This document shows, one piece after another, positions 1,615-19,776 of a DNA stretch of 64,000 bases. The translations under genes were made by a program, and so were the position numbers. The notes below the pieces were generated by a model that saw only the letters and a list, made by a program, of their open reading frames with translations, had not been told where the DNA came from and ran no database searches. The stretch covers positions 1 to 64,000 of the IMG/VR virus record IMGVR_UViG_3300046171_000231; one strand, written 5' to 3'. The number at the start of each line of letters is the position of its first letter. Position 1 is the first letter of the stretch.

Positions 1615-1625
1615 TGTGTAACTCC

Positions 1626-1808: not shown

Positions 1809-1839
1809 TGTAACTACTCTGTTTGTGCTGTATTATATA

Positions 1840-2344: not shown

Positions 2345-2350
2345 TTGATT

Positions 2351-2818: not shown

Positions 2819-2820
2819 TT

Positions 2821-4683: not shown

Positions 4684-4684
4684 C

Positions 4685-6252: not shown

Positions 6253-6267
6253 TTCGTAATTACTATT

Positions 6268-6322
6268 ATTATAGCAAAGATTTTACCATATATCAATGTG
6301 GTGTGACAGTAATTTAACTGTC
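6268..6322 (-). promoter_or_regulatory. sigma70 early promoter TTGATA-17-TATAAT (extended -10) with operator palindrome
   Basis: -35 6291-6296, -10 6268-6273, GACAGT-aattta-ACTGTC 6305-6322. Confidence 0.85.
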
Positions 6323-6490
6323 CTATCCACACTCACTTTCATAATTTGCCTGTGATATTATAATGCTATCCACTTTTTCTCTTACTAAATTACACCACTC
6401 AATATCTTCCTCATCAAGATTTGGATTTTCTTTAAGGTAATACTTTAATGCGTAATCTATAGTTGTTAGTTCATAATTGTCTAAATTCAT
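6323..6490 (-). CDS. hypothetical protein (MNLDNYEL..., 55 aa)
   Basis: ATGA overlap at 6487-6490 supports this start over 6553. Confidence 0.7.
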   Translation of the reverse strand: MNLDNYELTTIDYALKYYLKENPNLDEEDIEWCNLVREKVDSIIISQANYESECG

Positions 6491-6654
6491 AATAATCTCC
6501 ATTGATTTTTTTCTACCATAGCACCACACTCTTGACAACTGAGTGCTGACCAACTAAAGTGATATACTGTGGCAACTTTGTTACAATCAGGGCAAACTAT
6601 CTGTTTACCCCACATCCCTGCTCTGGTATGCTTATTTACTGTTTGTATTACCAT
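6487..6654 (-). CDS. small zinc-ribbon protein (55 aa), missed by ORF track
   Basis: MVIQTVNKHTRAGMWGKQIVCPDC...CQECGAMV...; two CxxC pairs. Confidence 0.7.
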   Translation of the reverse strand: MVIQTVNKHTRAGMWGKQIVCPDCNKVATVYHFSWSALSCQECGAMVEKNQWRLL

Positions 6655-6875
6655 TCTCCCTCTGGTTGTTTTGCTCTTGCCTTTTCAATCTTATTGTAAA
6701 ACTTATCAACAGTTGTTTCCAACTCTTTGAAAATTTCATCAATTTCTTCTACTAACTCTTCATCATCGTTACCTTGCACATAACCCTCTAAACAATAGAG
6801 AATAGTGCTTATCTGTTCTTCTCTCAAGGTCAACTTGAGAGGTGTCTGTGGAAATTCACTTCTAATTTTTGTCAT
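6648..6875 (-). CDS. hypothetical protein (75 aa)
   Basis: ORF tiling. Confidence 0.75.
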   Translation of the reverse strand: MTKIRSEFPQTPLKLTLREEQISTILYCLEGYVQGNDDEELVEEIDEIFKELETTVDKFYNKIEKARAKQPEGEW

Positions 6876-6876
6876 C

Positions 6877-7251
6877 TTACTCTCCTACAAACTTGTAGTT
6901 GTACTCTTCAAGTAGAATGTCTCTGACTCTTTCTCTGTCAAGTGAGTCTCCGTCTCCCCAAGTGCAATTTGTAACTCTCTCATCACTACATTGTGAAAGA
7001 TAGAATTGAGTAGCACTATAGATGTCAACTGTGTTGAGTGGTTGACCTGTCTCTTTACTCATCATAGGATAGAGTGGGTCAACAACACCATAGAATGAAT
7101 CTACATACTTCACGAAATCTGTGAGCATATCATTGAGTGCTGTTGATGGTATTCCTGAGTTCATAGTAAGGGATTTCTTGATTACTTCTCTATTATAGGG
7201 CATTTTATAACCTATGCGTGGTAGGTTGTGACACATATTTAACTGTCCCAA
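6877..7251 (-). CDS. hypothetical protein
   Basis: ORF; true start may be an internal Met. Confidence 0.7.
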   Translation of the reverse strand: MGQLNMCHNLPRIGYKMPYNREVIKKSLTMNSGIPSTALNDMLTDFVKYVDSFYGVVDPLYPMMSKETGQPLNTVDIYSATQFYLSQCSDERVTNCTWGDGDSLDRERVRDILLEEYNYKFVGE

Positions 7252-8156
7252 GCTCCACTTGTAAGGAAGTTTAATCTGCTAAACTCATCCCTATCAACTA
7301 ATTTGTATATACCCCACCTATTCCACATTACATAACCTTCGCCATCTATTTCGCCATCGTCATTAAATGTTGACCACCAAGCATTGTGTTCACATCTTTT
7401 GAGTGCATCCATTTTGATTGACTTGACTAACTTCCAAAGTCTCATCAAGTTAGGGTCAATATTATGTGAGTGTGATATAGTATCAATCACATCATCTGTC
7501 ATTCTTGTTCCAAGACGAATACAATGATTAATAGTTTTCTTTAATTCTTGTGCTTTTTTATTGTCAACAAACTGAACCATAGTTGCCATTTGTTTTGCAA
7601 ACTGACATCTATCATATACAAATTCTTGAAACTTAGCGATTGCATCACATTGAACATACAATACTTTATCAAGGTCAGTTTCAAGTGTATGGTCTAATGG
7701 TACTGCGTGTGTCTCAACTAAGGTGTTACCTGTAGCGATATACTCTGTGTGTGGTGCAATAATAATATTATGGTCTATCTTAAATGGAAATAGATAACCT
7801 ATTGTATTCGGTTGGTAATAGTCATCGCCACCGATACCAAGTAAGTCTCCCTGATATATTGTATCTGTTCTGATTAGATTATCAAAACAAGAGTGTAATT
7901 TATTTGCCAAGTCTGGTTTTTCAGCATATAATATATCAATCTCTTCGTGAGAGTGACATACCATCTTCTTGACTTTATTGAATACTGATTTAGTTCCTAC
8001 GAAAAATTTATCATTTTCGGGATTAGTTCCCCATACAATAGCAGGGCAACCATCTATTTTAAGAGATACCTTTCCCTGTAAAGTAAACCAGTTAATTGCT
8101 GATAAGTCTCCAGTAAGAATAGTATCTTCGGGATGTTCAATGTGTTTGAGTTGCAT
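7239..8156 (-). CDS. conserved cyanophage-type protein with ligase-like nucleotidyltransferase motifs
   Basis: KIDG, YQGD, EGYV, YKLV in ligase motif order. Confidence 0.6.
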   Translation of the reverse strand: MQLKHIEHPEDTILTGDLSAINWFTLQGKVSLKIDGCPAIVWGTNPENDKFFVGTKSVFNKVKKMVCHSHEEIDILYAEKPDLANKLHSCFDNLIRTDTIYQGDLLGIGGDDYYQPNTIGYLFPFKIDHNIIIAPHTEYIATGNTLVETHAVPLDHTLETDLDKVLYVQCDAIAKFQEFVYDRCQFAKQMATMVQFVDNKKAQELKKTINHCIRLGTRMTDDVIDTISHSHNIDPNLMRLWKLVKSIKMDALKRCEHNAWWSTFNDDGEIDGEGYVMWNRWGIYKLVDRDEFSRLNFLTSGAWDS

Positions 8157-8243
8157 TTGTTTGAGTGATAGTAGTTTGCTTAAACTAATATTATTCTCTC
8201 TCTATTGACCTTATATTAACACATACGAGATTATATAGTAAAA

Positions 8244-8384
8244 TTATAACCCAAATGGTAATAATCTGACACCATTTTTTAACAAGAATGTGTCAATAAT
8301 TAGGTTTGCTATATTAGTTCCCCAATGTAGCATCCATAGAAATGAAACAATAAAAATTAGTTTTTCTTTGATTGATAATTTCAT
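8244..8384 (-). CDS. small membrane protein (46 aa, MKLSIKEKLIFIVSFLWMLHW...)
   Basis: Read manually; starts 2 nt after the upstream stop. Confidence 0.6.
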   Translation of the reverse strand: MKLSIKEKLIFIVSFLWMLHWGTNIANLIIDTFLLKNGVRLLPFGL

Positions 8385-8385
8385 T

Positions 8386-8865
8386 TTACCTTAAGTATAA
8401 GTATCCACCCGCCCATCCTACACATCTAGGGTCAGTTAGAAATAACATATCCTTTTTATTACAAAAGCTATATCTAATGTGTTTTGCGGGTGCTTTCCAA
8501 GATGCAGGTTTGAATACATCCCCAGTTTTTTTATCTACAAATGAGTGAACTGTAGTATCTCTCCAATAACCAGTTTTTTCGTTATACTCTTCTCTGGTCA
8601 CTTTTAAATACTTCTTACCTTCACTATATCTAAATCTGTCTAGGTTTGCTTTACCTTGCATAATTTTAACAAGTTGATTTGCTGAATAAGTGCAATCAGG
8701 GTCACGTTGTAAGTTATGCTCAAGACTTCTAATTGTGTCCTGTTTGTAATTCTCATTGAGTGCTTTACAGTAGTCATCAACGTATCTGTTTAGAAATACT
8801 TGATTTGTTCTCTCTACTGATGCTCCGATTACTTTTTCCATAGGGGTGTTTCTTTGTTTATACAT
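8386..8865 (-). CDS. hypothetical phage protein (VHSFVDKKTGDVFKPASWKAP motif); likely start at 8841
   Basis: Leader cassette ACAAAGAAACACCCCTATG precedes MEKVIG. Confidence 0.8.
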   Translation of the reverse strand: MYKQRNTPMEKVIGASVERTNQVFLNRYVDDYCKALNENYKQDTIRSLEHNLQRDPDCTYSANQLVKIMQGKANLDRFRYSEGKKYLKVTREEYNEKTGYWRDTTVHSFVDKKTGDVFKPASWKAPAKHIRYSFCNKKDMLFLTDPRCVGWAGGYLYLR

Positions 8866-8923
8866 TCATTATAGCAATAAAAAAGGGGGTTGACCACCCC
8901 CTTGTGACACTTATTCAACTGTC
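8839..8923 (-). promoter_or_regulatory. early promoter cassette with operator and nested terminator
   Basis: TGCTATAAT (-10 8868-8873); GACACT-N6-ACTGTC 8906-8923. Confidence 0.8.
8879..8901 (-). terminator. intrinsic terminator
   Basis: GGGGGT/ACCCCC stem, 5-nt loop, U6 on minus strand. Confidence 0.8.
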
Positions 8924-9354
8924 TGCTTTTTTGGGATTTCTACCTCCTTGACAATTACTCTGGTAATCTTACTATAATCTTCATTAAACTTTTGTTCGGT
9001 AGAGTATGCTACCCATCTGTCTGTGACAAACACATAAGAAAACTCTTGCCAACAATCTATTCGTGTGAACTCATCAAAGTTCTTACTTAATACTGGTTCT
9101 TCATTATCCCCACCATAATAACTAGGTTTTGGGTCAGCGATAGGTGTGAACTCTCCTGTTTCTACATTAAACTTACTATCAGAATAGCAATTACTCATAT
9201 TGCCACCATCTATAAGTTCAGTAACTTTCTCATAAGTGTTGTAGTGTTCTACAAGTTTAACACCTAATCCCTCTGGGTATCCATCAAAGTGATGATATAC
9301 TGAAAGGATTGAATCATCAGGTAATTGAATACCTATTCTTGCTCTGGTTGACAT
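8911..9354 (-). CDS. conserved phage hypothetical protein (MSTRARIGI...YHHFDGYPEGLG)
   Basis: Recognisable phage-type N-terminal motif. Confidence 0.85.
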   Translation of the reverse strand: MSTRARIGIQLPDDSILSVYHHFDGYPEGLGVKLVEHYNTYEKVTELIDGGNMSNCYSDSKFNVETGEFTPIADPKPSYYGGDNEEPVLSKNFDEFTRIDCWQEFSYVFVTDRWVAYSTEQKFNEDYSKITRVIVKEVEIPKKQTVE

Positions 9355-9376
9355 AAGAGTTGTTTGTTAATAAGGT

Positions 9377-9478
9377 GCGAGAAACAAAAATACGGACTTA
9401 CACTCAATGATTTCCCTTATCCTTTCGGAGATAGTTAGGACTTGCACCTAACCCATTGGATGCCGATTTTGTTTCCCC
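9377..9478 (-). ncRNA. candidate structured RNA / cis-element with T-loop-like hairpin
   Basis: Closing stem GAAACAAAA/TTTTGTTTC; CGG/CCG; CAATG/CATTG; GTTAGG-TGCAAGT-CCTAAC; TCC-GAAA-GGA. Confidence 0.6.
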
Positions 9479-9482
9479 ACTA

Positions 9483-10040
9483 TTAATATAGCACTTCTAC
9501 AAGAGGATTCAACTTCTCTTGTGACACTTCAATTACTGGCATATAAAGGGTTCCATATTTACCGAATATTCGTCTAAACTTACCAAGTCTATCGCCAAGA
9601 TAAACTATTGCTGATTGAAATGGAGCTGCACCTTTTCCATTTCCAAATTTTAATCTTTTATTAATTGCTAGAAATGGATAGGTTGATATTGACTTCCACC
9701 ATCTTGTCGATACATCCATCTTAATCAACAGGACTAACTCTTTTGCGTGTCCTAGTTGATACTGTGATACTGCATAGGGTATCCACTCTTTACTATTACT
9801 ATATGGATGATTCATAAACACACTCTCGGCAACCCAATTTTGTGCTAAACCATTTATTTTCTCGTCAAAAAGTTTTTTAGCGGGTACATTGGGATTCTCG
9901 ATGTCATTACAACAGGGGTCTAAATCTAGTTTGTTATCGAAAAATTCTAGTACATCCCCTACAAACTCTGGTGGGGTGTTCCAACAATCAGTTCGAGTTC
10001 CTGTTGTTGCTGTTAAAGCTTTTAATGCTGTTGATGCCAT
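9483..10040 (-). CDS. phage Dam-like N6-adenine DNA methyltransferase (orphan)
   Basis: DCWNTP, LDLDPC and FMNHPY (NPPY variant) motifs. Confidence 0.8.
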   Translation of the reverse strand: MASTALKALTATTGTRTDCWNTPPEFVGDVLEFFDNKLDLDPCCNDIENPNVPAKKLFDEKINGLAQNWVAESVFMNHPYSNSKEWIPYAVSQYQLGHAKELVLLIKMDVSTRWWKSISTYPFLAINKRLKFGNGKGAAPFQSAIVYLGDRLGKFRRIFGKYGTLYMPVIEVSQEKLNPLVEVLY

Positions 10041-10046
10041 ACAGAT

Positions 10047-10075
10047 ATTATATCACACTTTCGGTATAATGTCCA
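10047..10075 (-). promoter_or_regulatory. sigma70 promoter TGGACA-17-TATAAT, extended -10, probably leaderless
   Basis: -10 10047-10052, -35 10070-10075, ATG at 10040. Confidence 0.7.
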
Positions 10076-10104
10076 CACTAAATATTTACAGTTCGGTTAT
10101 CCGT

Positions 10105-10347
10105 ATGAAATTAATTGATGGTTGCCACTCTTTAAAACTAGAATGTGCATTAAGGGAATTAGGTTTTGTAGATGTTGGTTGGAAATGTGTTGCCAACGCA
10201 GGTATATTTCTAGTTTTGCCTTTCGGTTTACCCGAAAAACCAGAGGGGGATTTGCTCGGATTTCAAGTTGTTAAATCTAGTAGGGTAATAAGATTATCCG
10301 AGAGTGCCAAAAAAGCTTTGGACTTTGCTATTGAAATGTCTGGTTAG
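10105..10347 (+). CDS. hypothetical protein (MKLIDGCHSLKLE..., 80 aa) behind a late-type TAAATA
   Basis: CTAAATA at 10078-10084; ATG at 10105; fills the gap between minus-strand genes. Confidence 0.6.
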   Translation: MKLIDGCHSLKLECALRELGFVDVGWKCVANAGIFLVLPFGLPEKPEGDLLGFQVVKSSRVIRLSESAKKALDFAIEMSG

Positions 10348-10571
10348 TCGTCATACACTAGACACTCTGGTTCATCAGGGTGCAAGTCGCAAAATAATTC
10401 TAGAGCATTTGGGTCGTGATGGTCGCCAGCTTTTATCTCTTCTGTGTGATGTCCGACATACTCTTGTAGTTCTTGAAGTTCCTCTTTGTAGTGTCTTCTA
10501 GCTGCTGAAGATACTGTTGGGTCTTCAATCTTCTTTTTATCGAACTCGATATGGTCTTCTATTGATTTCAT
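10344..10571 (-). CDS. cp12: CP12 Calvin-cycle inhibitor (cyanophage AMG)
   Basis: C-terminal LELFCDLHPDEPECLVYDD CP12 signature. Confidence 0.9.
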   Translation of the reverse strand: MKSIEDHIEFDKKKIEDPTVSSAARRHYKEELQELQEYVGHHTEEIKAGDHHDPNALELFCDLHPDEPECLVYDD

Positions 10572-10619
10572 AATGTGTTTTTCGTTTGTGTTAATACTAT
10601 TTAGGTTTTTAATGTTATT

Positions 10620-10796
10620 TTAATGTTCGGTCAAATCCCAATGCCATCTGATAGATTTGATAAAATCAAAGGTATCATCCATATAACTTCTATCATTATT
10701 GTCATATTTCCATTCACACAAGTAATTTCTCATTTCCTGTAGTGTCTGGAAATCTCCCTTATGGTCATAATTTTCGTCATACAAATGATACTTCAT
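10620..10796 (-). CDS. small hypothetical protein (58 aa, MKYHLYDENY...)
   Basis: Read manually; tiles after the 10799 stop. Confidence 0.65.
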   Translation of the reverse strand: MKYHLYDENYDHKGDFQTLQEMRNYLCEWKYDNNDRSYMDDTFDFIKSIRWHWDLTEH

Positions 10797-10798
10797 AA

Positions 10799-11032
10799 CT
10801 ATGGTAAATCGTGATTGAAAAATGTACCAAACATACCACTATCCCCATCCTTCCTCTGTTCTATTTGGTCTAAGACTTCACTTGCATCAATTACATTTTC
10901 AATCTGTGCTATCATATCAGCAATATTTTTACTGATAAATGGTTTCTCTGTTCTGGCTGCACACGCAAGAGCATTTTTTAAATCTTCTTGTGCATCCCTT
11001 AAAGATGACTTGACAGTTTCAGATAATGCCAT
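10799..11032 (-). CDS. hypothetical cyanophage protein (77 aa)
   Basis: TAATG overlap. Confidence 0.75.
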   Translation of the reverse strand: MALSETVKSSLRDAQEDLKNALACAARTEKPFISKNIADMIAQIENVIDASEVLDQIEQRKDGDSGMFGTFFNHDLP

Positions 11033-11418
11033 TATGCTTTAACCCATCCTGTATCGGTCAGTTGATAACCATTTGCTATCAACTCATCTTCATCTAACAA
11101 CCCTGTATTCTCTGGTTCAGTTTGTACCTTACCACTATCTGGTAATTCAGTATAATCTATCCATTTTTTCGGGTCTGTAAGATAATCATCATCCAACGCA
11201 CCCGCATTGATTTCAACTACATTGTTTTTCTTGTCCACACCATATAATAAATCCAAGACTTCCTTACTGTGCCTTGCACATACACGATGGTATTGTGAAT
11301 TTCTTTTCAATGTCAACATAATACAATCCAGTATATCCTGTGGGGATTCAACTGTGAGTGCATCCTCGATAGAGTCCTTTAAATTATTAAGTGATGGGCT
11401 AGAAAATTCGTCTATCAT
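11032..11418 (-). CDS. hypothetical protein (128 aa)
   Basis: ORF tiling. Confidence 0.75.
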   Translation of the reverse strand: MIDEFSSPSLNNLKDSIEDALTVESPQDILDCIMLTLKRNSQYHRVCARHSKEVLDLLYGVDKKNNVVEINAGALDDDYLTDPKKWIDYTELPDSGKVQTEPENTGLLDEDELIANGYQLTDTGWVKA

Positions 11419-11729
11419 TTGTTCTTATCCAAGTGAATTGCTTTCTCCATGATACCTTGAATTTCTTTGGATGTCAAGTTGTTCATCCAACTCCATTCGG
11501 GGTCTTGTTTATCCCATTCGACAGTAAAACTACCGTCTTTATTTTGATTGATTTTCAGAGATTGGTTGCTCATTACTGGAAAGTTTTAAAGTTCGTTTAA
11601 TTAGTCTTGCGTATTTCACTTCCGTATCGGTATATAATTCTGGGTTTGCTTTTGCTCTCTTAATCAATATCTTTGCTGCCTTCTTATCCTTCATCAAGTT
11701 TTAAGTTATATTAAGAATTATTTAGTATA

Positions 11730-12050
11730 TCAGGAATTAAAGATATTCTTGATGTCTCCTGATACCGATGAACTATCCTTTTTAATCTTAACTCTTGTCT
11801 TAAATCTATCATCGTGTTCTGATAATCTCATCTGAACATTTATCATTTCATCCTGTAATCTTTCTATCCTTTCATTCTGAGATTGTATAATTTCTTCCAT
11901 CATATATTGTTCCCCACTCATAGGGTCTTTCACTCTAACTTCAAACTGTTCTTCTGGTGTTAGTCTATTTCTGTATGGATATAACCAATCAGCAATTTCG
12001 TCTGCGACCATCCACGCAAACTCTCTAATTTTAAATAATACTTTCATCAT
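11730..12050 (-). CDS. hypothetical coiled-coil protein (106 aa)
   Basis: ORF tiling. Confidence 0.7.
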   Translation of the reverse strand: MMKVLFKIREFAWMVADEIADWLYPYRNRLTPEEQFEVRVKDPMSGEQYMMEEIIQSQNERIERLQDEMINVQMRLSEHDDRFKTRVKIKKDSSSVSGDIKNIFNS

Positions 12051-12207
12051 CTATCCCCATAATTGACATAATTGATAGTAGTGTATCATAAGGTATCCAA
12101 GCAGGCTCCTCATCGCCAAATCTAACTTCGACTTCCTTAATATTTTTCTGGTAAAATCTGCTATAAACAGTTCTTACGTTTTGAACGTATCTCAAAGGAC
12201 TAAACAT
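12031..12207 (-). CDS. hypothetical protein (MFSPLRY...)
   Basis: The TTG at 12225 lies in the -10 box, so the downstream ATG is preferred. Confidence 0.6.
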   Translation of the reverse strand: MFSPLRYVQNVRTVYSRFYQKNIKEVEVRFGDEEPAWIPYDTLLSIMSIMGIDDESII

Positions 12208-12224
12208 AATATATTGTTTCTCCA

Positions 12225-12259
12225 ATTATAAACCCCCTGACTTAAAAAGTCAAGGGGTT
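12225..12259 (-). promoter_or_regulatory. sigma70 promoter TTGACT-17-TATAAT with -35 inside an inverted repeat
   Basis: -10 12225-12230; -35 12248-12253; AACCCCCTGACTT/AAGTCAAGGGGTT arms. Confidence 0.75.
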
Positions 12260-12327
12260 GTTTTTTATTCTATTTTACTTAAGGTGGATGGTAGAATTGA
12301 TACATTTGCTAACTCGGTAAACTACAA

Positions 12328-12471
12328 TTAACGAATTAAAACCTCCTTACATATTCTCTTACATTCTGATTGTCTATCATCACATTCGATTAAGCACTCG
12401 TAATATTCTGTGATTAAATCGTTATCATCATTATAACCGTTGAGTTGATTTAGTGGAATTAAGTTGTGCAT
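12328..12471 (-). CDS. small Cys-rich protein (47 aa, ...YYECLIECDDRQSECKRICKEVL), cyanobacterial-type
   Basis: Read manually; CxxxC-x6-CxxxC pattern. Confidence 0.7.
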   Translation of the reverse strand: MHNLIPLNQLNGYNDDNDLITEYYECLIECDDRQSECKRICKEVLIR

Positions 12472-12624
12472 TTTATCGAATAATAGTTGAATATTTGAAC
12501 CATAATACAGGAGTTTTAGTGCATCTTGTTTTCTCCAACTCTATACTATTATGTATGCAAATCCACACCGTATTTTCCGATACAATTTAACAAAAATTTA
12601 TGCCTACGCACATATACCTAGTGT

Positions 12625-12924
12625 CTAATCTCTTTGTCTCCAATCGTCTGACCTGTCAGGTTTGAACCAATCAACAATCTCATCTGGACTATTAAAACCC
12701 CTTTTGTGATTACTTGAATCGGGGTCTCCAATATTCAAGTTATTCAAAAAAGAATCATTCGGATTCCTTGATATTTTCCTTGCTTTGTTTAACATTCCTC
12801 TAGCACTTGTATTCGCCTTTCCCAATTTGTTTGCCCATATCATATCTTCTAATGAAACTTCTGTTCCCGAAGCAATGTCCTTGCAAATAGCTTCTAATCT
12901 TAGTCGGTATTGGGTAGATAACAT
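12625..12924 (-). CDS. conserved cyanophage hypothetical protein (99 aa)
   Basis: MLSTQYRLRLEAICKDI...DWRQRD. Confidence 0.8.
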   Translation of the reverse strand: MLSTQYRLRLEAICKDIASGTEVSLEDMIWANKLGKANTSARGMLNKARKISRNPNDSFLNNLNIGDPDSSNHKRGFNSPDEIVDWFKPDRSDDWRQRD

Positions 12925-13043
12925 AAGGTAATTTTATAGTTCACATTATTTATTTTAATAGATTTACCCTAGTATTAATGTATTAGTATGAACACATTAC
13001 CGCCATTTTGTAAATGGTTTTGTATCAACAGCAATCCTATCTT

Positions 13044-13316
13044 TCACTTCATCCTATCTTTCACTTCAATTAACTTTGCTGTCTCTAATTCATCACTCTC
13101 ATCTGCATAGGTATGATGTGTGACTTCCTTCAATGTTTTAAGGTATTCTAAAACGTGTTCTCTTATTTCCATCAGGTCATCATAACAACCTTGATTATAT
13201 GCACAACCACGCAAATCAGCATCAGGTTTCATTACTGACTCCGTAAATAAATCCAACGCTCGCTGATATTTTTCAGCAGAAGTTTCATTCTTATCAGATG
13301 AGTTTTGATCGTGCAT
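13044..13316 (-). CDS. hypothetical protein (90 aa)
   Basis: ORF tiling. Confidence 0.75.
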   Translation of the reverse strand: MHDQNSSDKNETSAEKYQRALDLFTESVMKPDADLRGCAYNQGCYDDLMEIREHVLEYLKTLKEVTHHTYADESDELETAKLIEVKDRMK

Positions 13317-13548
13317 TTTTCTTCTCCTTTTTAATTCCTTTTTGTATGTATATCATAGCACATTCAAAATTCTTTGAGAAGTGTTCAATGATACCATTAT
13401 GAACAATGGCAAATTTTCTTCCATCAGACGGAACTGCAGCCCACGAACCATCCTTTGTTACATAACCAGTTGGTTGACCAACTTTGGCATCTAACAAAGA
13501 GGGGAGTGTGGTAGGGTAAAAAGTTTGATAATTAACTTTTCTTGCCAT
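13294..13548 (-). CDS. hypothetical protein (84 aa)
   Basis: ORF tiling. Confidence 0.7.
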   Translation of the reverse strand: MARKVNYQTFYPTTLPSLLDAKVGQPTGYVTKDGSWAAVPSDGRKFAIVHNGIIEHFSKNFECAMIYIQKGIKKEKKNARSKLI

Positions 13549-13812
13549 TAATATACTGCTGTTACACTTATAATCCTAGCGTTAGGATTTCTTGCAAGTG
13601 CTACTTGTCTTGCTTCCTGATAGTCAACTGCTCTAACTTCTTCGTTGAACACTTGACCTGCAACATACAGTTGTACTTTAACTCTCATTAGAATAATCTC
13701 CCTTTAGTTACGAAATTTACGATTGCCATTGATGAACCAATACAAAATGTCATCAATGCAAATGTGAGTACGAATCCTTCAATCATTTGTCTTTCTTTTG
13801 TTTACTCTTCTA

Positions 13813-14775
13813 TTATATAATATCTAAGATGTTAATGCAAGTCTCTTGTGCCACTTCTTGAACTGGTTTATATTCTTGCACTCTCTTCTGAATTAAGTTA
13901 CCATAATCTTCGTGTAGTTCGCACCCAATATAATCTCTGCCAAGTGCCTTTGCGACTGCAGCTGTAGTTCCAGAACCCATAAAAGGGTCAAGTATTATAT
14001 CTCCTATCTCACTCCCTGCAAGTATGCAAGGTTCAATCAAGTCAGGTGGATATGTAGCAAAATGAGCTTCACGATATGGTTTATTTGTTACTGTCCAGAC
14101 AGAGCGTTTATTCTTTGTTGGATATGATTTTGTAAGTCCGCTATGTGGTTGGAGTCCTGTTCCTTCGTTGTGATATTTTCCATTTGTTCTGTCTCTTGTT
14201 CCCCAATCTTTTGCGGGTTCTTTGATTGCTTCATTATTGTAGTAATACTTTTTGTTTTTACTGAATAAAAATATATATTCGTGTGCCTTCGTACACCTGT
14301 CTCTCACACTTTCTGGCATTGGATTTGGTTTATGCCATATTATATCTTGACGTAAATGCCATCCATCATTTCTCATTGCAAATGCGAACATCCACGGAAT
14401 ACCTATCAAATCCTTTTCTTTAAGTCCTTCTAATTTATTTGCTCTCTTCGCACATTTATCTGGTAGGTCTTGTTTCGTTTTAGATACTGATTGTTTGACA
14501 AGTGCTTGACCTTTACCAGGTCGATAGTTATAGTAACTATCCCCAAGATTAACCCAACAAGTTCCATCATCAGTAAGAACATTTTTTACCTCTCGGAATA
14601 CTGATACTAATTGTTCAATAAATTCCTCTGGAGTTTGTTCCTGACCGATTTGTTTATCCTCTCCACCATAATCTCTAAGTCCATAATAAGGTGGGGATGT
14701 GATGCAAGTCCTTGCCTGTTCATCAAACTCTTTGAGTGTCTCACGACAATCTCCAAATAAAATTGTGTCTCTCAT
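13813..14775 (-). CDS. beta-class N4-cytosine/N6-adenine DNA methyltransferase
   Basis: TSPPY catalytic motif near N-terminus, DPFMGSGTT SAM motif near C-terminus. Confidence 0.92.
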   Translation of the reverse strand: MRDTILFGDCRETLKEFDEQARTCITSPPYYGLRDYGGEDKQIGQEQTPEEFIEQLVSVFREVKNVLTDDGTCWVNLGDSYYNYRPGKGQALVKQSVSKTKQDLPDKCAKRANKLEGLKEKDLIGIPWMFAFAMRNDGWHLRQDIIWHKPNPMPESVRDRCTKAHEYIFLFSKNKKYYYNNEAIKEPAKDWGTRDRTNGKYHNEGTGLQPHSGLTKSYPTKNKRSVWTVTNKPYREAHFATYPPDLIEPCILAGSEIGDIILDPFMGSGTTAAVAKALGRDYIGCELHEDYGNLIQKRVQEYKPVQEVAQETCINILDII

Positions 14776-15458
14776 TTAATAATCTCCTTAACAAATAATT
14801 TGTCCAAATGACTACCTTTCATACGAAATGCTGTTCCTCTGTCTCTAATACTCAAACCTTTATTATACTGTGTATAGAACCTAAAGTCAATGGATATAAT
14901 ATCATCTATAATTAACTGTTTGAACAGTTCTTTACTGGTTCCTGTAAGAATATATGCTTCGTTGAACCAGAAGTATATTTTATCTCCTTCTCTTTTTTCT
15001 TCTCCATATACTTTAATAGCTCTAGGAAATTTCTTGACAAACTGTGATGTTAGTGATTTCCAAGACCATTGACATAATATAGTATCATTCAATCTAACAT
15101 ACAATTTATCTGTTGTGTCTAACCATAGTTGTCTTTTATTTGGTGTTCTAGTTATTGTGGATTGTATTGTCTTTTCTCCTTTGTGTGTTGCGTGTTCCCA
15201 TCCATAATCATTTACTACCCTCTTTTGTGGTATTATCCACTCAGGAGATTTGTTGAACAAGGTCATTTTTGATTTTGTTCGCTTACTCTGAACTTTTATC
15301 TCATGCCCATCTATATCAGGAGCATCTATATTGTTCTCAGTTAAACCAAGTAAATCTTCAAAGGTATTACCAAATTTACCATCGCCTTTTCTTGTAATTT
15401 CAATAAAACCCTCTGATTTAATTTGTTTGTATCTTGGTATAAATTCTTGTATGTTCAT
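14772..15458 (-). CDS. MvaI/BcnI-family restriction endonuclease
   Basis: GxxFExLLGxxENNxxxPD-x4-EIK...TLF signature; ATGA overlap with MTase. Confidence 0.8.
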   Translation of the reverse strand: MNIQEFIPRYKQIKSEGFIEITRKGDGKFGNTFEDLLGLTENNIDAPDIDGHEIKVQSKRTKSKMTLFNKSPEWIIPQKRVVNDYGWEHATHKGEKTIQSTITRTPNKRQLWLDTTDKLYVRLNDTILCQWSWKSLTSQFVKKFPRAIKVYGEEKREGDKIYFWFNEAYILTGTSKELFKQLIIDDIISIDFRFYTQYNKGLSIRDRGTAFRMKGSHLDKLFVKEIIK

Positions 15459-15459
15459 A

Positions 15460-15897
15460 TTACCTCTTCAAAAACTCATTTAAAATCCAACTACTACTAT
15501 TCATCTTATTATCGCCACCGACACCCCACTCAAAGACAACTCTTTCATTATCTTTAAATTTAAGATATTCTGGAACATTGGTGTCAACTCTATCTCCTCC
15601 ATTACAGAATATCACTCTATCATACATTTGTAAACACTTATGGATTGCCATACAAGATGTATTATCTGTATCATCATAAGTAATCGTCAAGTCAACTGGT
15701 TTAAGTTCTTTGACTATTAATCTTCTTTCTGCCATTGGTAAGAAATACTTTCCTTTCTTACGAATTAACCACTCATCAGAATTTAAACCGACACACAATG
15801 GTACGCTAGGGTTAAACTCTTTAGCATCCCTAAAATATGCGATGTGACCACTATGTATGGGGTCAAATCCACCTGTAACTAAAATAATTGCACTCAT
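15460..15897 (-). CDS. cytidylyltransferase-like (HIGH superfamily) protein
   Basis: TGGFDPIHSGH, GLNSD, NGGDR, SSS motifs. Confidence 0.88.
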   Translation of the reverse strand: MSAIILVTGGFDPIHSGHIAYFRDAKEFNPSVPLCVGLNSDEWLIRKKGKYFLPMAERRLIVKELKPVDLTITYDDTDNTSCMAIHKCLQMYDRVIFCNGGDRVDTNVPEYLKFKDNERVVFEWGVGGDNKMNSSSWILNEFLKR

Positions 15898-17073
15898 CTT
15901 GTAATAACTGTTGTAGCTGCTTGACCTTTGTTGAAGATAGTATCGACTACTGCTTCAACCTTTCTTGCGGTAGTAATACCAACATTAGAGTAAACTGGTA
16001 CGCATACAAGACCGAATACTTTGTCTGCATTACCCTTACGAATAACCCTACCAATAGTCTGACTAATACCTATGTAATCCATAGAACGCATAAACAATAC
16101 TGCTTCAAGTCCATTGACATTGATACCCTCTGAGAGTATGCTGTGATGAAGTACAACAAACTTCTTTCCGTTTCTACCCCACTCATTAAGAGTGTTAAAG
16201 AAAGTCTCTCTATCGACCTTCTCCCCATCAATCATAGCACCTGTCTTTGCTGTGATAAACATATAAGAGTAACCACGAATTGCTAACTGTTGTACGAAAT
16301 CAGTTTGAGAAATAAGTGAAACAATTTGTCTTGTTGACTTGGCACAAATTAATACTTTGTCCTTGTCAAGATTATCTATAGCACCAATCATTTGCTCATT
16401 ATCTCTGTCTGCAACTAACTCATCTTTCTTGAGTATTCTTGAACGATACACCTTAACTTTAGGTGGTAAAATATAACCTTGCTTGACTAACTTTGGTGCA
16501 GGTACTTGACATATCACACCACCATAAACCTCTGTCCAGTTCATACCTGGTCTTTACAGAGTCCTAGAGTGCTTTGGTGTTGCTGTAAAGAAGTAGCATC
16601 TATCAGCATACTGATGAGAAGTAATCAGTAGCAGGGTAAAAGTTTTTCTGTACTGAGTTGTGTGCTTCATCAAAGTAGATAGTATCAACATTGATACCAC
16701 TCTCTTCAATCCTGTGTAGTGAATGATAAGTTGTAAATATAATTCTTCTGCCACCCAAGTTCTGCTCAACAAACTGCTGTATTTGAAATGGATTAGTGCT
16801 ACTGAACACACCTTTGATTTTACCACTATGAACGTGCATTACATCTACATCATTGTACTTCTCATCAATGATTTCCATAAATTCGTGTGATAGTTGCTCT
16901 GCAAGTAGTATGCGTGGTGCAACTACAACAATCGTGCCATAATCTTCCAACTGCTTGACAGCATCCATAATCATACAGATGGTCTTACCACCACCAGTAG
17001 GAACAATGACTTGTCCTTTGTCATTGTCTAACATTGATTGGATTGCTTGCTCTTGATGGGGTCTTAGTTGCAT
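15894..17073 (-). CDS. SF2 (DEAD/H-like) helicase, broken by a frameshift (~16625) and an in-frame stop (16554)
   Basis: LRPHQ, PTGGGKT, DEAH, FTATP, LSEGIN, QTIGRVIR motifs spread over three ORF pieces. Confidence 0.85.
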
Positions 17074-17094: not shown

Positions 17095-17149
17095 ATTATA
17101 GCATTAAAAAACCCCTTGTGCAGGGGCTTGTGACAGTTTTAGGACTGTT
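17095..17149 (-). promoter_or_regulatory. early promoter with operator and nested terminator
   Basis: TGCTATAAT (-10 17095-17100); GACAGT-N6-ACTGTT 17132-17149. Confidence 0.75.
17106..17126 (-). terminator. intrinsic terminator
   Basis: CCCCT/AGGGG stem, 5-nt loop, U6 on minus strand. Confidence 0.7.
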
Positions 17150-17762
17150 TCTCCTTACATCCAAAGAAATGTGTTATGGCATATCTACCATATCCATCAT
17201 AATAATCTGAATCTTTTATAGAAACCTCACTTACTCCATGTTCTACCCAAGCTGGCATCATAATTAATGAATTATGGTCACAACTAAACTTATAATCATA
17301 CTTTGGGAAAATTAAATTACCTCCATCAAACTTCTTTGGTTCTTTATGAAAGTATGAAAATGCTAAAAATTCATAAAATGTATCAGTATGTGGTTTGTAG
17401 TAATCTCCATTATGATAATATCTAACTTTTGTAACATCATAGTTCGCTGATTTTGCAAAAGTGCAAGAATCATTCAACTTTGAAAATGGTTCTAACACTT
17501 GTTTATCAAAGACTTTTCTTGATACATTTAAGATGTTAGATATTTTTCTATTTTTTCCTGTGTAAACTGAGTCTAAATGTAATGCTTTTGCTTTAGTATA
17601 TCCAACTACTCCCTGATAATCCTCTACATCAAATAACTTATCTGGTTTTGTATAAAAATTTAATTCCTCCCATATAAGAGTCAACTCTTCTTCATCATAA
17701 AAATTATGAAAAATAAAGTGTGGGAATGGTTCTAGATAGGCATCAGCAGAGATGTTTTGCAT
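17139..17762 (-). CDS. 2OG-Fe(II) oxygenase (prolyl-hydroxylase-like)
   Basis: PHTD, GGNL, EHGV, GRY motifs. Confidence 0.85.
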   Translation of the reverse strand: MQNISADAYLEPFPHFIFHNFYDEEELTLIWEELNFYTKPDKLFDVEDYQGVVGYTKAKALHLDSVYTGKNRKISNILNVSRKVFDKQVLEPFSKLNDSCTFAKSANYDVTKVRYYHNGDYYKPHTDTFYEFLAFSYFHKEPKKFDGGNLIFPKYDYKFSCDHNSLIMMPAWVEHGVSEVSIKDSDYYDGYGRYAITHFFGCKEKQS

Positions 17763-17790
17763 TACTAGATAGTTGTGTTATAATAGAATT

Positions 17791-18072
17791 ATGAGAAATA
17801 TTTTTAAGGAATCCAAATATCACTTAGAAGTAGAAACTGGATGGACTTATTGGTTTCATCTGAAACATTCTCTTATAAACTCATATAAATTGATAAAAAT
17901 ATCATTTAAGAGTCTAGTTCATGGGTTACTACCATTTATGTGGAAATCAGATGCACCCAAAGGTGTAATCATATTATACCACGAAATTATGAAAATACAA
18001 CATATACAAAAACTTGATAAACTCCGAAAATATCCAAAAAATGAACGATACATATCTAACGATACTGAATAG
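17791..18072 (+). CDS. small hydrophobic hypothetical protein, probably leaderless
   Basis: TGTTATAAT ends 17784, ATG at 17791. Confidence 0.7.
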   Translation: MRNIFKESKYHLEVETGWTYWFHLKHSLINSYKLIKISFKSLVHGLLPFMWKSDAPKGVIILYHEIMKIQHIQKLDKLRKYPKNERYISNDTE

Positions 18073-18610
18073 TTACGGAGATATAGTTGAACTTAACTAT
18101 CAATTTGATGTACCATCTATCATAGATGAATTAAAGTCTGTTGATAAGTGGATAGATGGTTCTAATAATAAAAAAGGATTAACTCTTACTGGTAGTGTTG
18201 ATGACTTAGAATTGACACAAAGAAATGATAGTAGTATAAATGATAATCTTAAAAAATGTCCATCACTCCTTGATTTTTTTAAATTATGGAACAGCCTTGC
18301 TAAATGTCACGCAGTCAATATGAATAGTGGTAGTTTTTTTCGATTACATCGTGACGCATATAAAACAACCCAACAAATGAGAATATTCATACCACTTAAT
18401 AAAACAGAATTACACGAATTTGCATTTATATACGATAAGAATATAGTCGAACTCAAAGCTGGTAGAGCATACTTATTAAATACTAAAAAACAACACGGTT
18501 CATTTGCTATGGTTGATGACATTTATCATATTTTAATAGGAGTTTATATCAATCCTCACAACTTCAAAGTTGTTACAAATTTATTACCAAATTGCATAGA
18601 CCACGAATGA
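18041..18610 (+). CDS. Asp/Asn beta-hydroxylase-like cupin oxygenase
   Basis: LHRD...RIFIPL...GRAYLLNTKKQH pattern. Confidence 0.75.
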   Translation: MNDTYLTILNSYGDIVELNYQFDVPSIIDELKSVDKWIDGSNNKKGLTLTGSVDDLELTQRNDSSINDNLKKCPSLLDFFKLWNSLAKCHAVNMNSGSFFRLHRDAYKTTQQMRIFIPLNKTELHEFAFIYDKNIVELKAGRAYLLNTKKQHGSFAMVDDIYHILIGVYINPHNFKVVTNLLPNCIDHE

Positions 18611-19776
18611 AAATCTGTATTATTGGTGGTGGTACAACTGGTTGGTGGTGTGCATCATATATGCAGAAATTTCTTGATGCAGATATTACACTCATAGAAA
18701 GTGATGAGATTCCAATAAGTGGTGTTGGAGAATCAACTTTACCACAAATCAAAACATTTTTTGACGAGTTAGAAATACCTGAGAGTGAGTGGATGAAAGA
18801 ATGTAATGCGATTCATAAGTATGGAAATATAAAATATGATTGGAATCACATAGGTTCTAAACCCTTCTATACAACTTTTTGGCAGAATAATCCTAAAGGA
18901 TTATTTGATGAGTGGTATCAAGCATATCAAGATGGAACTTTACTGAAAGAAGACCACGTTGAATTATATAATAACGAATACATTGGTTATCACTTAGATG
19001 CAACCTTGATAAACAATTTTATGAGAAATTATTGTAAAGATGTTAAACATATTGTAGATACAATCACAGAATTACCACAAGGTTATGATTTATATGTTGA
19101 CGCTACTGGATTTGAAAGAAGATTTACAAAAGATAATGAAGAGATAGAATTAAATCATCATCTTGTGAATAGTGCGTGGGTATATTCTCTTGAATATGAT
19201 GGTATAAACCCATTTACAAAATCTATAGCAAGAACAAACGGGTGGCAATTTGAAATTGATTTACAAAATCGAACTGGAACGGGTTACGTTTTTAGTGATA
19301 AATTTACTAATGACGATGATGCACTTAAAGAATTAAAATCTTGGACTACTCGTAAAATTATTACTGAACCAAAATTAATTAAATGGAAACCTAGTGTATT
19401 AAAAAATGCTTGGAGTGATAATGTTGTTACAGTTGGTCTTGGTCAAGGATTTATTGACCCATTGGAATCAAACGGGTTATATATGGTTGTCTATAGTATA
19501 ACTCTCTTGGTGAAATGTATTTTAAAAGGTTCGTCACCTCAAGCATATAATCGAACTATGTCAAAAGTTCATCGAGATAATTCTAATTACATATTACACC
19601 ATTATATGCTCTCACAAAGAGATGATACTGATTTTTGGAAATACTATAAAAAGTTTGACGCAACAAAAACAGTATGGGATGAGTATTTAAAGAAAACAAA
19701 TGAATACACAAATCTATATCCCGATGCAATATGGGCTCAATTAGGATTATATTTCGATGCTCCTAAACCTTCGTAA
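18607..19776 (+). CDS. flavin-dependent tryptophan halogenase-like protein
   Basis: GGGTTG, GVGEST, conserved Lys in AIHKYG, YVDATG, GFIDPLES. Confidence 0.88.
   Translation: MKICIIGGGTTGWWCASYMQKFLDADITLIESDEIPISGVGESTLPQIKTFFDELEIPESEWMKECNAIHKYGNIKYDWNHIGSKPFYTTFWQNNPKGLFDEWYQAYQDGTLLKEDHVELYNNEYIGYHLDATLINNFMRNYCKDVKHIVDTITELPQGYDLYVDATGFERRFTKDNEEIELNHHLVNSAWVYSLEYDGINPFTKSIARTNGWQFEIDLQNRTGTGYVFSDKFTNDDDALKELKSWTTRKIITEPKLIKWKPSVLKNAWSDNVVTVGLGQGFIDPLESNGLYMVVYSITLLVKCILKGSSPQAYNRTMSKVHRDNSNYILHHYMLSQRDDTDFWKYYKKFDATKTVWDEYLKKTNEYTNLYPDAIWAQLGLYFDAPKPS

What the first reader, a model, noticed from the sequence alone, without database searches (positions are those of the whole stretch)
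13813..15458. Complete MvaI/BcnI-type restriction-modification pair in a lytic phage
Seen: an endonuclease with the MvaI/BcnI signature overlaps (ATGA) an SPPY-type beta-class MTase; both look intact. Established: MvaI (CCWGG) and BcnI (CCSGG) pair with N4-cytosine MTases. Phages usually carry orphan MTases rather than paired REases. CCWGG is present in this window (e.g. 16546-16550); I noticed no CCGG but did not count exhaustively. Inference: host-DNA degradation, exclusion of co-infecting phage, or a selfish addiction module.
Basis: partly seen in the sequence, partly recalled or inferred. Interest (0 to 1): 0.65.

Follow-up and report, generated by a model that had tools for sequence, protein, structure and literature searches.

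The report
MvaI-type restriction-modification pair in cyanophage
A T4-like marine cyanophage carries an intact MvaI-family restriction enzyme gene fused by a 4-base overlap to the cytosine methylase that most of its relatives carry alone; the nuclease is an optional gene that some wild strains have and close relatives lack.

Summary
ORF 14772-15458(-) is a full-length MvaI/BcnI-family endonuclease: Pfam E 2e-40, all four catalytic residues present, and an AF2 model that matches the MvaI-DNA complex at TM 0.81. It overlaps by ATGA ORF 13813-14775(-), a beta-class TSPPY methyltransferase (PF01555, E 2e-58). The genome is a 236-kb T4-like cyanomyovirus.

New findings:
- The methylase is the conserved cyanomyovirus 'T4-GC 38' gene. 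It stands without this nuclease in P-SSM2/3/4/7, P-HM2 and others.
- The nuclease is rare: it hit 1 of 50,697 phage records. In all 17 loci with downstream sequence it sits directly upstream of this methylase, in at least five gene contexts.
- The nuclease and methylase trees disagree. A recombination breakpoint lies inside the methylase gene. A P-HM2-like contig differs from P-HM2 by a clean 683-nt nuclease-sized indel.
- Contigs from all four sequencing runs examined join the flanks without the nuclease.
- The residues that read the central base pair resemble MvaI, not BcnI.
- The genome has 148 CCWGG sites and no CCSGG. The CCGG avoidance is lineage-wide and unrelated to this pair.

Most likely this is a CC^WGG / m4C system that cuts unmethylated host and competitor DNA. 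Specificity and activity are untested.

The parts
14772..15458 (-). Restriction endonuclease gene, 228 aa, MvaI/BcnI (MutH-like PD-(D/E)XK) family. Catalytic residues are E34, D48, E53 and K55. Residues at the DNA-reading positions are D191, R193 and R205-D-R207.
   Evidence: Pfam PF15515 E 2.4e-40. PDB sequence hits to MvaI and BcnI. The catalytic residues are invariant in 18- and 31-sequence alignments. AF2 pLDDT 90.9; Foldseek top hit 2oaa (MvaI-DNA complex), TM 0.81, E 1e-18. dN/dS 0.10-0.30.
13813..14775 (-). Beta-class DNA methyltransferase gene, 320 aa. Motif IV is TSPPY (residues 26-30) and motif I is DPFMGSGTT (263-271). It is the ortholog of the cyanomyovirus 'T4-GC 38' methylase and is the predicted N4-cytosine enzyme that protects CCWGG.
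   Evidence: PF01555 E 1.8e-58. 76-88% aa identity to the methylases of P-SSM7, P-SSM2, P-SSM4, P-HM2, S-SSM4 and others. It is the only PF01555 gene, and there is no C5 methylase gene, in the genome. dN/dS 0.06-0.14.
14772..14775 (-). ATGA overlap: the methylase start codon (14775-14773) overlaps the nuclease stop codon (14774-14772). This arrangement allows translational coupling.
   Evidence: Read directly from the sequence. The same 4-nt overlap (ATGA, TTGA or GTGA) occurs in the related loci.
14784..14789 (-). Shine-Dalgarno sequence AAGGAG for the methylase, 8 nt before its ATG. It is encoded by the conserved K-E codons at the nuclease C-terminus.
   Evidence: A GGAG core (AAGGAG in seven) is present in all nine nuclease genes compared.
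14862..14890 (-). Sigma-70-like promoter candidate (TTGACT, 17 nt, TATAAT; 11 of 12 matches) inside the 3' part of the nuclease gene, about 90 nt upstream of the methylase start. It may give the methylase a promoter of its own. Confidence is low.
   Evidence: Best match in the scan, although the scan as a whole found no more sites than chance. Both hexamers are conserved at the nucleotide level in 7 of 9 nuclease genes, down to 52% aa identity. Eco29kI is a precedent for a methylase promoter inside an upstream overlapping R gene (PMC3113576).
15460..15897 (-). Cytidylyltransferase-like gene, 145 aa, directly upstream. Its stop codon lies 1 nt before the nuclease ATG, so it belongs to the same tightly packed gene string.
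   Evidence: PF01467 E 1.9e-8; phrog_7878. The same neighbour occurs in L004, L007 and L017.
15894..17073 (-). Superfamily-2 helicase ('T4-GC 36'), split here into two ORFs (16603-17073 and 15894-16544). It is the first gene of the string helicase - cytidylyltransferase - R - M.
   Evidence: ResIII/DEAD and Helicase_C hits. Relatives have an intact protein of 392-395 aa. Most of the contig depth in run X1 has one base fewer at 16614.
14516..14520 (.). First CCWGG site of the genome record, inside the methylase gene. It is one of 148 predicted target sites that would need methylation.

Best explanation
This is a working Type IIP restriction-modification operon of the MvaI kind, carried by a lytic T4-like cyanomyovirus.

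Shown here:
- The nuclease gene is intact, belongs to the family by profile, residues and fold, and is under purifying selection.
- It is translationally coupled to a TSPPY beta-class methylase.
- That methylase is the lineage's resident, widely conserved gene. The nuclease is an optional gene always placed directly upstream of it.
- The nuclease is exchanged between phage backgrounds by homologous recombination.
- In nature the nuclease is present in a minority of close relatives.

Inferred:
- The nuclease acts as a monomer that nicks both strands in turn at CC^WGG.
- The methylase makes N4-methylcytosine at the inner C of CCWGG, which blocks MvaI-type cleavage even on one strand. The phage's 148 sites are therefore protected in the virion DNA and after replication.
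- In the infected cell every unmethylated CCWGG is cut. That includes the host chromosome and the DNA of co-infecting phages that lack this methylase.
- The result would be host shut-off, nucleotide supply and exclusion of competitors.
- The methylase kept by nuclease-less relatives makes them immune to nuclease-bearing strains.
For: Family membership: Pfam, PDB and fold results.

Catalytic residues: E34/D48/E53/K55 align with MvaI E36/D50/E55/K57 and are invariant in the clade.

Selection: dN/dS is 0.10-0.30 for R and 0.06-0.14 for M.

Central-base readers:
- MvaI D207 and R209 (R209 contacts the central T) correspond to D191 and R193 here. BcnI has Cys at the R209 position.
- BcnI D32, H77 and H219 are Gly, Asn and Ala here, against Gly, Thr and Ala in MvaI.

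Target sites: the genome has 148 CCWGG and 0 CCSGG.

Linkage: the nuclease is followed at once by this methylase in 17 of 17 loci with downstream sequence, across at least five gene contexts. That linkage is only needed if the phage genome carries target sites.

Methylases in the genome: one N4C-type methylase, one Dam-like D12 methylase, and no C5 methylase.

Published methylomes: marine Myoviridae-like viral MAGs share m4C motifs that include CCWGG (PMC8919816). [quoted passage not shown]

Optional, mobile nuclease:
- The methylase tree mixes paired and orphan genes; well-supported branches force at least 3 changes.
- The R and M trees are incongruent.
- L007 and L017 are 100% identical in nucleotides across R and the first ~330 nt of M, then drop to ~77%.
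- L005 differs from P-HM2 by a clean 683-nt indel, with 98% and 90% identical flanks.
- Contigs that skip 14776-15469 occur in all four runs laid, and summed contig depth (no copy number) over R is 5-20 times lower than over the flanks.
Against: - No cleavage or methylation has been measured. The specificity rests on a few aligned residues at about 27% identity to MvaI. The HDH triplet that reads the CC half-site in MvaI is RDR here, and MvaI T29 is Gly as in BcnI.
- Because CCSGG is absent from the genome, a relaxed CCNGG specificity cannot be told from CCWGG.
- The methylase has been annotated as an adenine methylase in several genomes. Its target has not been determined for any ortholog.
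- P-TIM68 has a weak PvuII-like ORF next to its ortholog, so orthologs might differ in target.
- Relatives without the nuclease infect the same hosts, so it is not required for infection.
- I could not count sites in a host genome.
- The RNA-library contig inside the gene does not prove transcription.
Confidence: 0.62

Rival explanations
1. The molecular system is the same, but its selected role is only to degrade the host chromosome for nucleotide supply and host shut-off, as in chloroviruses. Exclusion of competitors would be irrelevant.
For: Chlorovirus R-M systems degrade host DNA (PMC7253447). Any 1.7-2.5 Mb cyanobacterial genome is expected to hold hundreds to thousands of CCWGG sites; this is an inference from base composition, not a count. 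The nuclease sits in a string with replication and nucleotide-sugar genes.
Against: Most close relatives lack the nuclease, and contigs joining its flanks without it occur in all four runs examined. It is therefore dispensable for productive infection. Marseillevirus R-M systems, which are also optional within their family, do not degrade host DNA but do cut competitor viruses.
Confidence: 0.25
2. The nuclease is BcnI-like (CCSGG) or has another specificity that is absent from the phage genome. Self-protection would then come from site avoidance, and the adjacent methylase would be functionally unrelated.
For: CCSGG occurs 0 times against 19-74 expected, and CCGG once against 79-211 expected. 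D26 and G27 match BcnI D33 and G34.
Against: The avoidance of CCGG, GCGC, CGCG and GGCC is lineage-wide in phages without the nuclease. All three BcnI readers of the central pair (D32, H77, H219) are replaced, while MvaI R209 is kept. The strict 17-of-17 adjacency and translational coupling to one methylase family, across different genomic sites, would be unexplained.
Confidence: 0.1
3. The protein is not a restriction enzyme in vivo. It could be a decaying passenger, or a MutH-like strand-specific nickase used for recombination-dependent replication or for repair directed by hemimethylated sites.
For: The family is structurally related to MutH. T4-like phages rely on recombination-dependent replication (established knowledge). 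One gene context places the pair between uvsX and gp41.
Against: Purifying selection acts along the whole protein, both lobes are conserved, and the catalytic residues are invariant. No MutS or MutL partner was seen near it. The related enzymes MvaI and BcnI cut both strands (PMC5766183).
Confidence: 0.06

Closest known systems
MvaI restriction-modification system (R.MvaI CC^WGG with M.MvaI, m4C at the inner C) and its relative BcnI (CC^SGG)
   Same: Same Pfam family, the same E-D-E-K active site, the same two-lobed fold (TM 0.81 to 2oaa, 0.77 to 2odi), similar length, and pairing with an SPPY-type methylase. The residues at the central-base positions follow MvaI.
   Different: Only about 27% identity to MvaI. 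The HDH reader of the CC half-site is RDR here. The pair is carried by a lytic T4-like cyanophage rather than a bacterium. Most cellular family members found here (38% identity or less) have no close homolog of this methylase next to them.
Chlorovirus R-M systems and the Marseilleviridae GATC R-M system (melbournevirus mel_015/mel_016)
   Same: A lytic virus encodes a complete Type II R-M pair with adjacent genes. The pair is present in only part of the virus family and is under purifying selection. The proposed roles are host-DNA degradation (chloroviruses) and exclusion of co-infecting viruses that lack the methylase (marseilleviruses). Orphan methylases in relatives are proposed to act as immunity (PMC7253447).
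   Different: Those are eukaryotic giant viruses with unrelated enzyme families. There, M and R are gained or lost together. Here M is nearly universal in the lineage and only R varies.
Eco29kI R-M operon
   Same: The R gene precedes and overlaps the M gene. In Eco29kI a promoter inside R supplies enough methylase (PMC3113576). Here a conserved TTGACT-17-TATAAT lies inside the 3' end of R.
   Different: Eco29kI is plasmid-borne and bacterial, with unrelated enzymes. The promoter proposed here is only a consensus match.
Free-standing homing endonuclease genes of T4-like phages (seg and mob genes)
   Same: An optional nuclease ORF is inserted exactly between conserved genes, at several different junctions (including uvsX-gp41). 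It is polymorphic in populations and flanked by recombination tracts.
   Different: The nuclease is not of the GIY-YIG or HNH type and has no long, specific homing site. Alleles without the nuclease still encode the protective methylase, so cleavage-driven homing into them is not expected.

Membership tests
MvaI/BcnI restriction endonuclease family (PF15515) | Full-length match to the family profile above the curated cut-off | tested here: met
   E 2.4e-40, 139.4 bits against a cut-off of 25; residues 9-222 match profile positions 3-227 of 227.
MvaI/BcnI restriction endonuclease family (PF15515) | PD-(D/E)XK active site equivalent to MvaI Glu36, Asp50, Glu55 and Lys57 | tested here: met
   E34, D48, E53 and K55 align with these residues and are invariant in 31 clade members.
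MvaI/BcnI restriction endonuclease family (PF15515) | Two-lobed MutH-like fold with a catalytic lobe and a recognition lobe | tested here: met
   AF2 model with pLDDT 90.9 and pTM 0.83. Foldseek gives 2oaa TM 0.81 (E 1e-18), 2odi TM 0.77, and MutH as a distant hit.
MvaI/BcnI restriction endonuclease family (PF15515) | Monomer that cuts both strands of CC^WGG (MvaI) or CC^SGG (BcnI) by sequential nicking | not testable with these tools
   Only indirect evidence is available. The central-base residues follow MvaI: R193 corresponds to R209, and Gly, Asn and Ala stand at BcnI D32, H77 and H219.
Beta-class N4-cytosine DNA methyltransferase (PF01555, M.MvaI/M.PvuII type) | Profile match, with motif IV N-terminal to motif I (beta order) | tested here: met
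   PF01555 E 1.8e-58. TSPPY lies at residues 26-30 and DPFMGSGTT at 263-271.
Beta-class N4-cytosine DNA methyltransferase (PF01555, M.MvaI/M.PvuII type) | SPPY/SPPF form of motif IV, typical of N4C enzymes, rather than the DPPY/NPPY form of N6A enzymes | tested here: met
   TSPPY is present in all 21 orthologs examined. The reading of SPPY as a marker of N4C enzymes rests on established knowledge, not on a test made here.
Beta-class N4-cytosine DNA methyltransferase (PF01555, M.MvaI/M.PvuII type) | Makes m4C at the inner cytosine of CCWGG | not testable with these tools
   Indirect support only. m4C at CCWGG is reported in marine Myoviridae-like viral MAGs (PMC8919816). This is the only cytosine-type methylase gene in a genome with 148 CCWGG sites and an adjacent MvaI-like nuclease.
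Type II restriction-modification system | Adjacent, co-oriented R and M genes of matching specificity, with target sites in the carrier's own genome that need protection | tested here: inconclusive
   Adjacency and coupling are met, and linkage holds in 17 of 17 loci. There are 148 candidate sites. Matching specificity is inferred, not shown.
Mobile homing-endonuclease-like gene | Precise presence/absence polymorphism at gene junctions, with recombination tracts | tested here: met
   A 683-nt indel against P-HM2; a 100%-identity tract that ends inside M; joints that skip R in four runs.
Mobile homing-endonuclease-like gene | The nuclease cleaves the nuclease-less allele and so drives its own copying into it | tested here: not met
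   Nuclease-less alleles keep the orthologous methylase. Their DNA should therefore be protected, and no specific homing site is evident.

The most novel reading that the evidence does not exclude
The 'orphan' N4-cytosine methylase kept by most marine cyanomyoviruses is an antidote in phage-against-phage warfare. A minority of strains carry an MvaI-type nuclease that plugs in directly upstream of this methylase and moves between lineages by recombination. It destroys host DNA and the DNA of competitors that lack the methylase. Nuclease-less strains keep the methylase because it makes them immune.
Probability: 0.3. Interest if true: 0.75.

Novelty: new member of a known kind. Interest (0 to 1): 0.55.

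Why it matters
- Cyanomyoviruses are among the most abundant viruses in the ocean. Their conserved methylase has been treated as an orphan 'adenine methylase' of unclear purpose.
- Here that methylase is the partner of an optional restriction enzyme that circulates in wild populations: the stretch is held in marine sequencing runs from 14 studies, 2017-2025.
- This gives the methylase a concrete role that can be tested: self-protection and immunity.
- It also points to a nuclease that may shape host-DNA degradation and competition between co-infecting phages of Prochlorococcus and Synechococcus.
- P-HM2 and a wild contig that differs from it by exactly the nuclease gene form a natural near-isogenic pair for experiments.

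Tried and rejected
I fetched DNA and counted by script instead.
- Relatives cannot be drawn for a virus record.
- I tried to reach a Prochlorococcus genome through psbA homologs in order to count host sites. The hits carried no usable genome labels, so host CCWGG counts were not obtained. Host site numbers in this report are inference only.
- A link between CCGG/CCSGG avoidance and this R-M pair is rejected. The same avoidance is seen in P-SSM7, P-SSM2 and AG-345-P14, which lack the nuclease.
- The 226-aa ORF upstream of the P-RSM6 methylase is a gp45 sliding clamp, not a nuclease.
- The small ORF PSSM2_040, between the helicase and the methylase of P-SSM2, is not a nuclease remnant (hhalign probability 0.1%).
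- P-SSM4 'restriction endonuclease II' (PSSM4_046) has no Pfam or PDB support and no similarity to this nuclease.
- The promoter scan as a whole found no more sites than chance (22 against 21.8), and no terminator was found. Only the one conserved site is reported, at low confidence.
- No paper in the searchable library reports an MvaI-type nuclease in a cyanophage.
- The large representative-protein search and complex prediction were not used, because the family scans had already settled the identity.
Full report
OBSERVATION

Two intact ORFs lie on the minus strand: 14772-15458 (228 aa) and 13813-14775 (320 aa). They share the four bases 14772-14775, which read ATGA: the methylase start overlaps the nuclease stop.

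The upstream ORF matches Pfam PF15515 (MvaI_BcnI) over its whole length (E 2.4e-40). It also matches the solved chains of R.MvaI (E 6e-18) and R.BcnI (E 1e-11). No PHROG family matches it.

The downstream ORF matches PF01555 (E 1.8e-58). It carries TSPPY near the N-terminus and DPFMGSGTT near the C-terminus, which is the beta-class motif order.

The window is the first 64 kb of a 235,761-bp virus record that CheckV rates as complete (35% GC). It carries T4-type baseplate, tail and tail-fibre genes. The nearest named relatives are Prochlorococcus cyanomyoviruses of the Kyanoviridae.

THE NUCLEASE

- Catalytic residues. MvaI Glu36, Asp50, Glu55 and Lys57 (PMC1874612) align with E34, D48, E53 and K55 here. 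These are invariant in alignments of 18 and 31 marine relatives that go down to 48% identity.
- Fold. An AlphaFold2 model (pLDDT 90.9) finds the MvaI-DNA complex 2oaa first (TM 0.81, E 1e-18). BcnI-DNA 2odi follows (TM 0.77), with MutH far behind.
- Selection. Pairwise dN/dS is 0.10-0.30. The gene encodes a constrained, apparently active enzyme.

WHICH SEQUENCE DOES IT CUT?

The published structures name the residues that read the central base pair.

- In MvaI, Arg209 donates a hydrogen bond to O4 of the central T, and Asp207 reads the neighbouring C. Here the aligned residues are R193 (Arg or Lys across the clade) and D191. BcnI has Cys at the Arg209 position.
- In BcnI, D32 (minor groove), H77 and H219 read the central C:G pair. 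Here these positions are Gly, Asn and Ala. MvaI has Gly, Thr and Ala.
- So all three BcnI readers are missing and the MvaI reader is kept.
- Two differences from MvaI remain. Its H223-D-H225 triplet, which reads the CC half-site, is R-D-R here. Its T29 is Gly here, as in BcnI.

A second argument comes from site counts.

- The genome has 148 CCWGG sites (137-221 expected under Markov orders 0-2), no CCSGG and one CCGG.
- The loss of CCGG is not tied to this system. CCGG, GCGC, CGCG and GGCC are equally missing from P-SSM7, P-SSM2 and AG-345-P14, none of which has the nuclease.
- A CCSGG-specific nuclease would therefore need no methylase at all.
- Yet the nuclease is followed at once by this methylase in all 17 loci that extend downstream.
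- That linkage makes sense only if the phage genome holds targets, which points to CCWGG. A relaxed CCNGG specificity cannot be told apart in these genomes.

Two further facts fit this reading.

- The genome has no other cytosine-type methylase. There is one PF01555 gene, one Dam-like D12 gene and no C5 methylase.
- m4C at CCWGG has been reported as a motif shared by marine Myoviridae-like viral genomes (PMC8919816).

I put CCWGG at about 0.7.

THE METHYLASE IS THE LINEAGE'S OWN GENE

- The methylase is 76-88% identical in protein to genes of P-SSM7, P-SSM2, P-SSM3, P-SSM4, P-HM2, MED4-213, P-RSM4, P-RSM6, P-TIM68 and S-SSM4. This is the 'T4-GC 38' cluster, annotated variously as adenine or cytosine methylase.
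- All 21 orthologs examined carry TSPPY.
- Sullivan et al. list an 'N6A-methylase' among genes shared by 14 of the 16 cyanomyovirus genomes compared (PMC3037559).
- About 39 phage records carry an ortholog at 60% identity or more.
- The nuclease finds one record among 50,697, the single-cell-associated virus AG-345-L05. It finds 13 contigs in IMG/VR.
- In raw metagenome proteins the nuclease clade is nevertheless populous: 43 clusters with hundreds of members.
- No cyanobacterial genome carries a relative. Cellular homologs are 38% identical or less, and most have no close homolog of this methylase beside them. The three closest 'MAG' hits carry the same phage cassette.

THE NUCLEASE IS AN OPTIONAL, RECOMBINING ADD-ON

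The pair occurs in at least five gene contexts:
- helicase - cytidylyltransferase - R - M (the window, L004, L007, L017);
- helicase - R - M;
- 2OG-Fe(II) oxygenase - R - M;
- uvsX - R - M - gp41;
- R - M - helicase.

Four results show that the nuclease comes and goes independently of the methylase.

- Trees. On the methylase tree, paired and orphan genes are interspersed, and well-supported branches force at least three changes. The nuclease tree disagrees with it. L007 and L017 have identical nucleases but methylases only 88% identical.
- Breakpoint. At the nucleotide level L007 and L017 are 100% identical from about 440 nt upstream of R through the first ~330 nt of M. Identity then falls to ~77%, so a recombination breakpoint lies inside the methylase gene.
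- Clean indel. Contig L005 is 98% identical to P-HM2 across the upstream oxygenase gene and 90% identical across the methylase. It differs by a clean 683-nt indel that is exactly the nuclease ORF. TGAA microhomology lies at both junctions. In P-HM2 the ATGA junction joins the oxygenase directly to the methylase.
- Wild populations. The 3.7-kb stretch is held by runs of 14 studies of marine and viral metagenomes from 2017 to 2025.
  - On Logan contigs of four runs, the bins over the nuclease have 5-20 times less summed depth than the flanking genes. Summed contig depth is no copy number.
  - Contigs joining 14775 to 15470 (six other letters in between) occur in all four runs. Other joints run from 14775 to 15467 and from 14775 to 15912.
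  - Contigs identical to the window across the whole nuclease gene occur in two DNA runs.
  - A 226-nt identical piece occurs in one RNA library, which does not prove transcription.
  - The joint sides are short (24-32 nt), so these are best read as haplotypes of related phages.

GENE ANATOMY

- The genes helicase, cytidylyltransferase, R and M are packed with overlaps or gaps of 1-4 nt.
- The last codons of the nuclease (K-E) form AAGGAG eight bases before the methylase ATG; a GGAG core is kept in all nine nuclease genes compared.
- A TTGACT-17-TATAAT match lies at 14890-14862 inside the nuclease gene. Both hexamers are kept at the nucleotide level in 7 of 9 nuclease genes.
- In Eco29kI, which has the same R-before-M overlapping layout, a promoter inside R supplies the methylase (PMC3113576). 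For this phage the promoter is only a lead, because the scan as a whole was at chance level.

MECHANISM AND ROLE

Shown: the gene identities, the coupling, the conservation, the optional and mobile nature of R, and the site counts.

Inferred:
- Virion DNA enters the cell methylated.
- The nuclease cuts unmethylated CCWGG in the host chromosome and in co-infecting phages that lack this methylase. For example, P-SSP7 has 35 sites in 45 kb.
- Hemimethylated daughter DNA stays protected, because m4C on either inner cytosine blocks MvaI-type cleavage.

The closest biological parallels are two groups of eukaryotic giant viruses (PMC7253447). In chloroviruses the R-M system degrades host DNA. In marseilleviruses an optional R-M pair cuts competitor viruses, and orphan methylases are proposed to act as immunity.

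A homing-like drive into nuclease-less kin is unlikely, because those kin keep the methylase.

NOVELTY

The enzyme families and the idea of virus-borne R-M systems are known. I found no report of an MvaI-family nuclease in a cyanophage. P-SSM4 and P-SSM3 carry a gene annotated 'restriction endonuclease II' beside the same methylase, but the annotation has no profile support.

I file this as a new member of a known kind. Its interesting twist is that only the nuclease varies, while the methylase is lineage-wide.

LIMITS

- No host genome could be fetched, so host site counts are inference.
- All read evidence comes from short contigs, not raw reads.

Noticed in passing
window 15894-17073 (-): The helicase upstream of the R-M pair is split into two ORFs (16603-17073 and 15894-16544). 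Relatives have one intact ORF of 392-395 aa. In run X1 nearly all contig depth has one base fewer at 16614. The frameshift is therefore a minority variant or an assembly error rather than a lineage feature.
   Followed up: partly
whole genome G000 and loci L013-L016: GC-only 4-base palindromes are almost totally avoided: CCGG 1, GCGC 0, CGCG 0 and GGCC 24, against 40-211 expected. RGCY and AGCT are strongly depleted. The same is seen in P-SSM7, P-SSM2 and AG-345-P14, but much less in the podovirus P-SSP7.
   Followed up: partly
window 1-14515, continuing at G000:C1:234223-235761: A 16-kb run of small ORFs next to the R-M genes has no CCWGG at all. Local composition predicts 11-13 sites (Markov orders 1-3); 68 CCWG and 71 CWGG tetramers are present. 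GGWCC is also low there (1 against 6.7). A second empty stretch lies at 164282-174571 (0 against about 6). Small-ORF regions of relatives without the nuclease are also poor in sites but not empty. This is unexplained.
   Followed up: partly
G000:C1:231310-231903 (-) and G000:C1:155861-156586 (-), outside the window: A 197-aa ORF weakly matches only the catalytic N-terminal part of PF15515 (E 8e-5, 23 bits, below the cut-off) and has an E..D..ExK pattern. It may be a MutH/Sau3AI-like nuclease. The genome also has a D12 Dam-like methylase. GATC is under-represented here (446 against 742-1002 expected) but not in P-SSM7 or P-SSM2. This could be a second, GATC-directed pair.
   Followed up: partly
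L085 (P-SSM4 40590-43188); L081 (P-SSM3): P-SSM4 and P-SSM3 carry genes annotated 'restriction endonuclease II' (PSSM4_046) and 'DNA methyltransferase' (PSSM4_047) directly upstream of the same T4-GC 38 methylase. Neither has a Pfam hit, and PSSM4_046 has no meaningful PDB sequence match. The neighbourhood of this methylase may be a hot spot for nuclease genes.
   Followed up: partly
L087:2445-2990 (P-TIM68, AIR93420.1): The 181-aa ORF directly downstream of the P-TIM68 methylase ortholog gives a weak Endonuc-PvuII match (E 0.002, 18.5 bits, below the cut-off).
   Followed up: no
L007 (IMGVR_UViG_3300020430_001548): This 7-kb contig, which also carries the R-M pair and a second PF01555 methylase, has 3 GATC against 21-24 expected.
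   Followed up: no
window 17139-19776: The neighbourhood holds a 2OG-Fe(II) oxygenase (17139-17762) and a tryptophan-halogenase-like gene (18592-19776). These are typical cyanomyovirus accessory genes.
   Followed up: no
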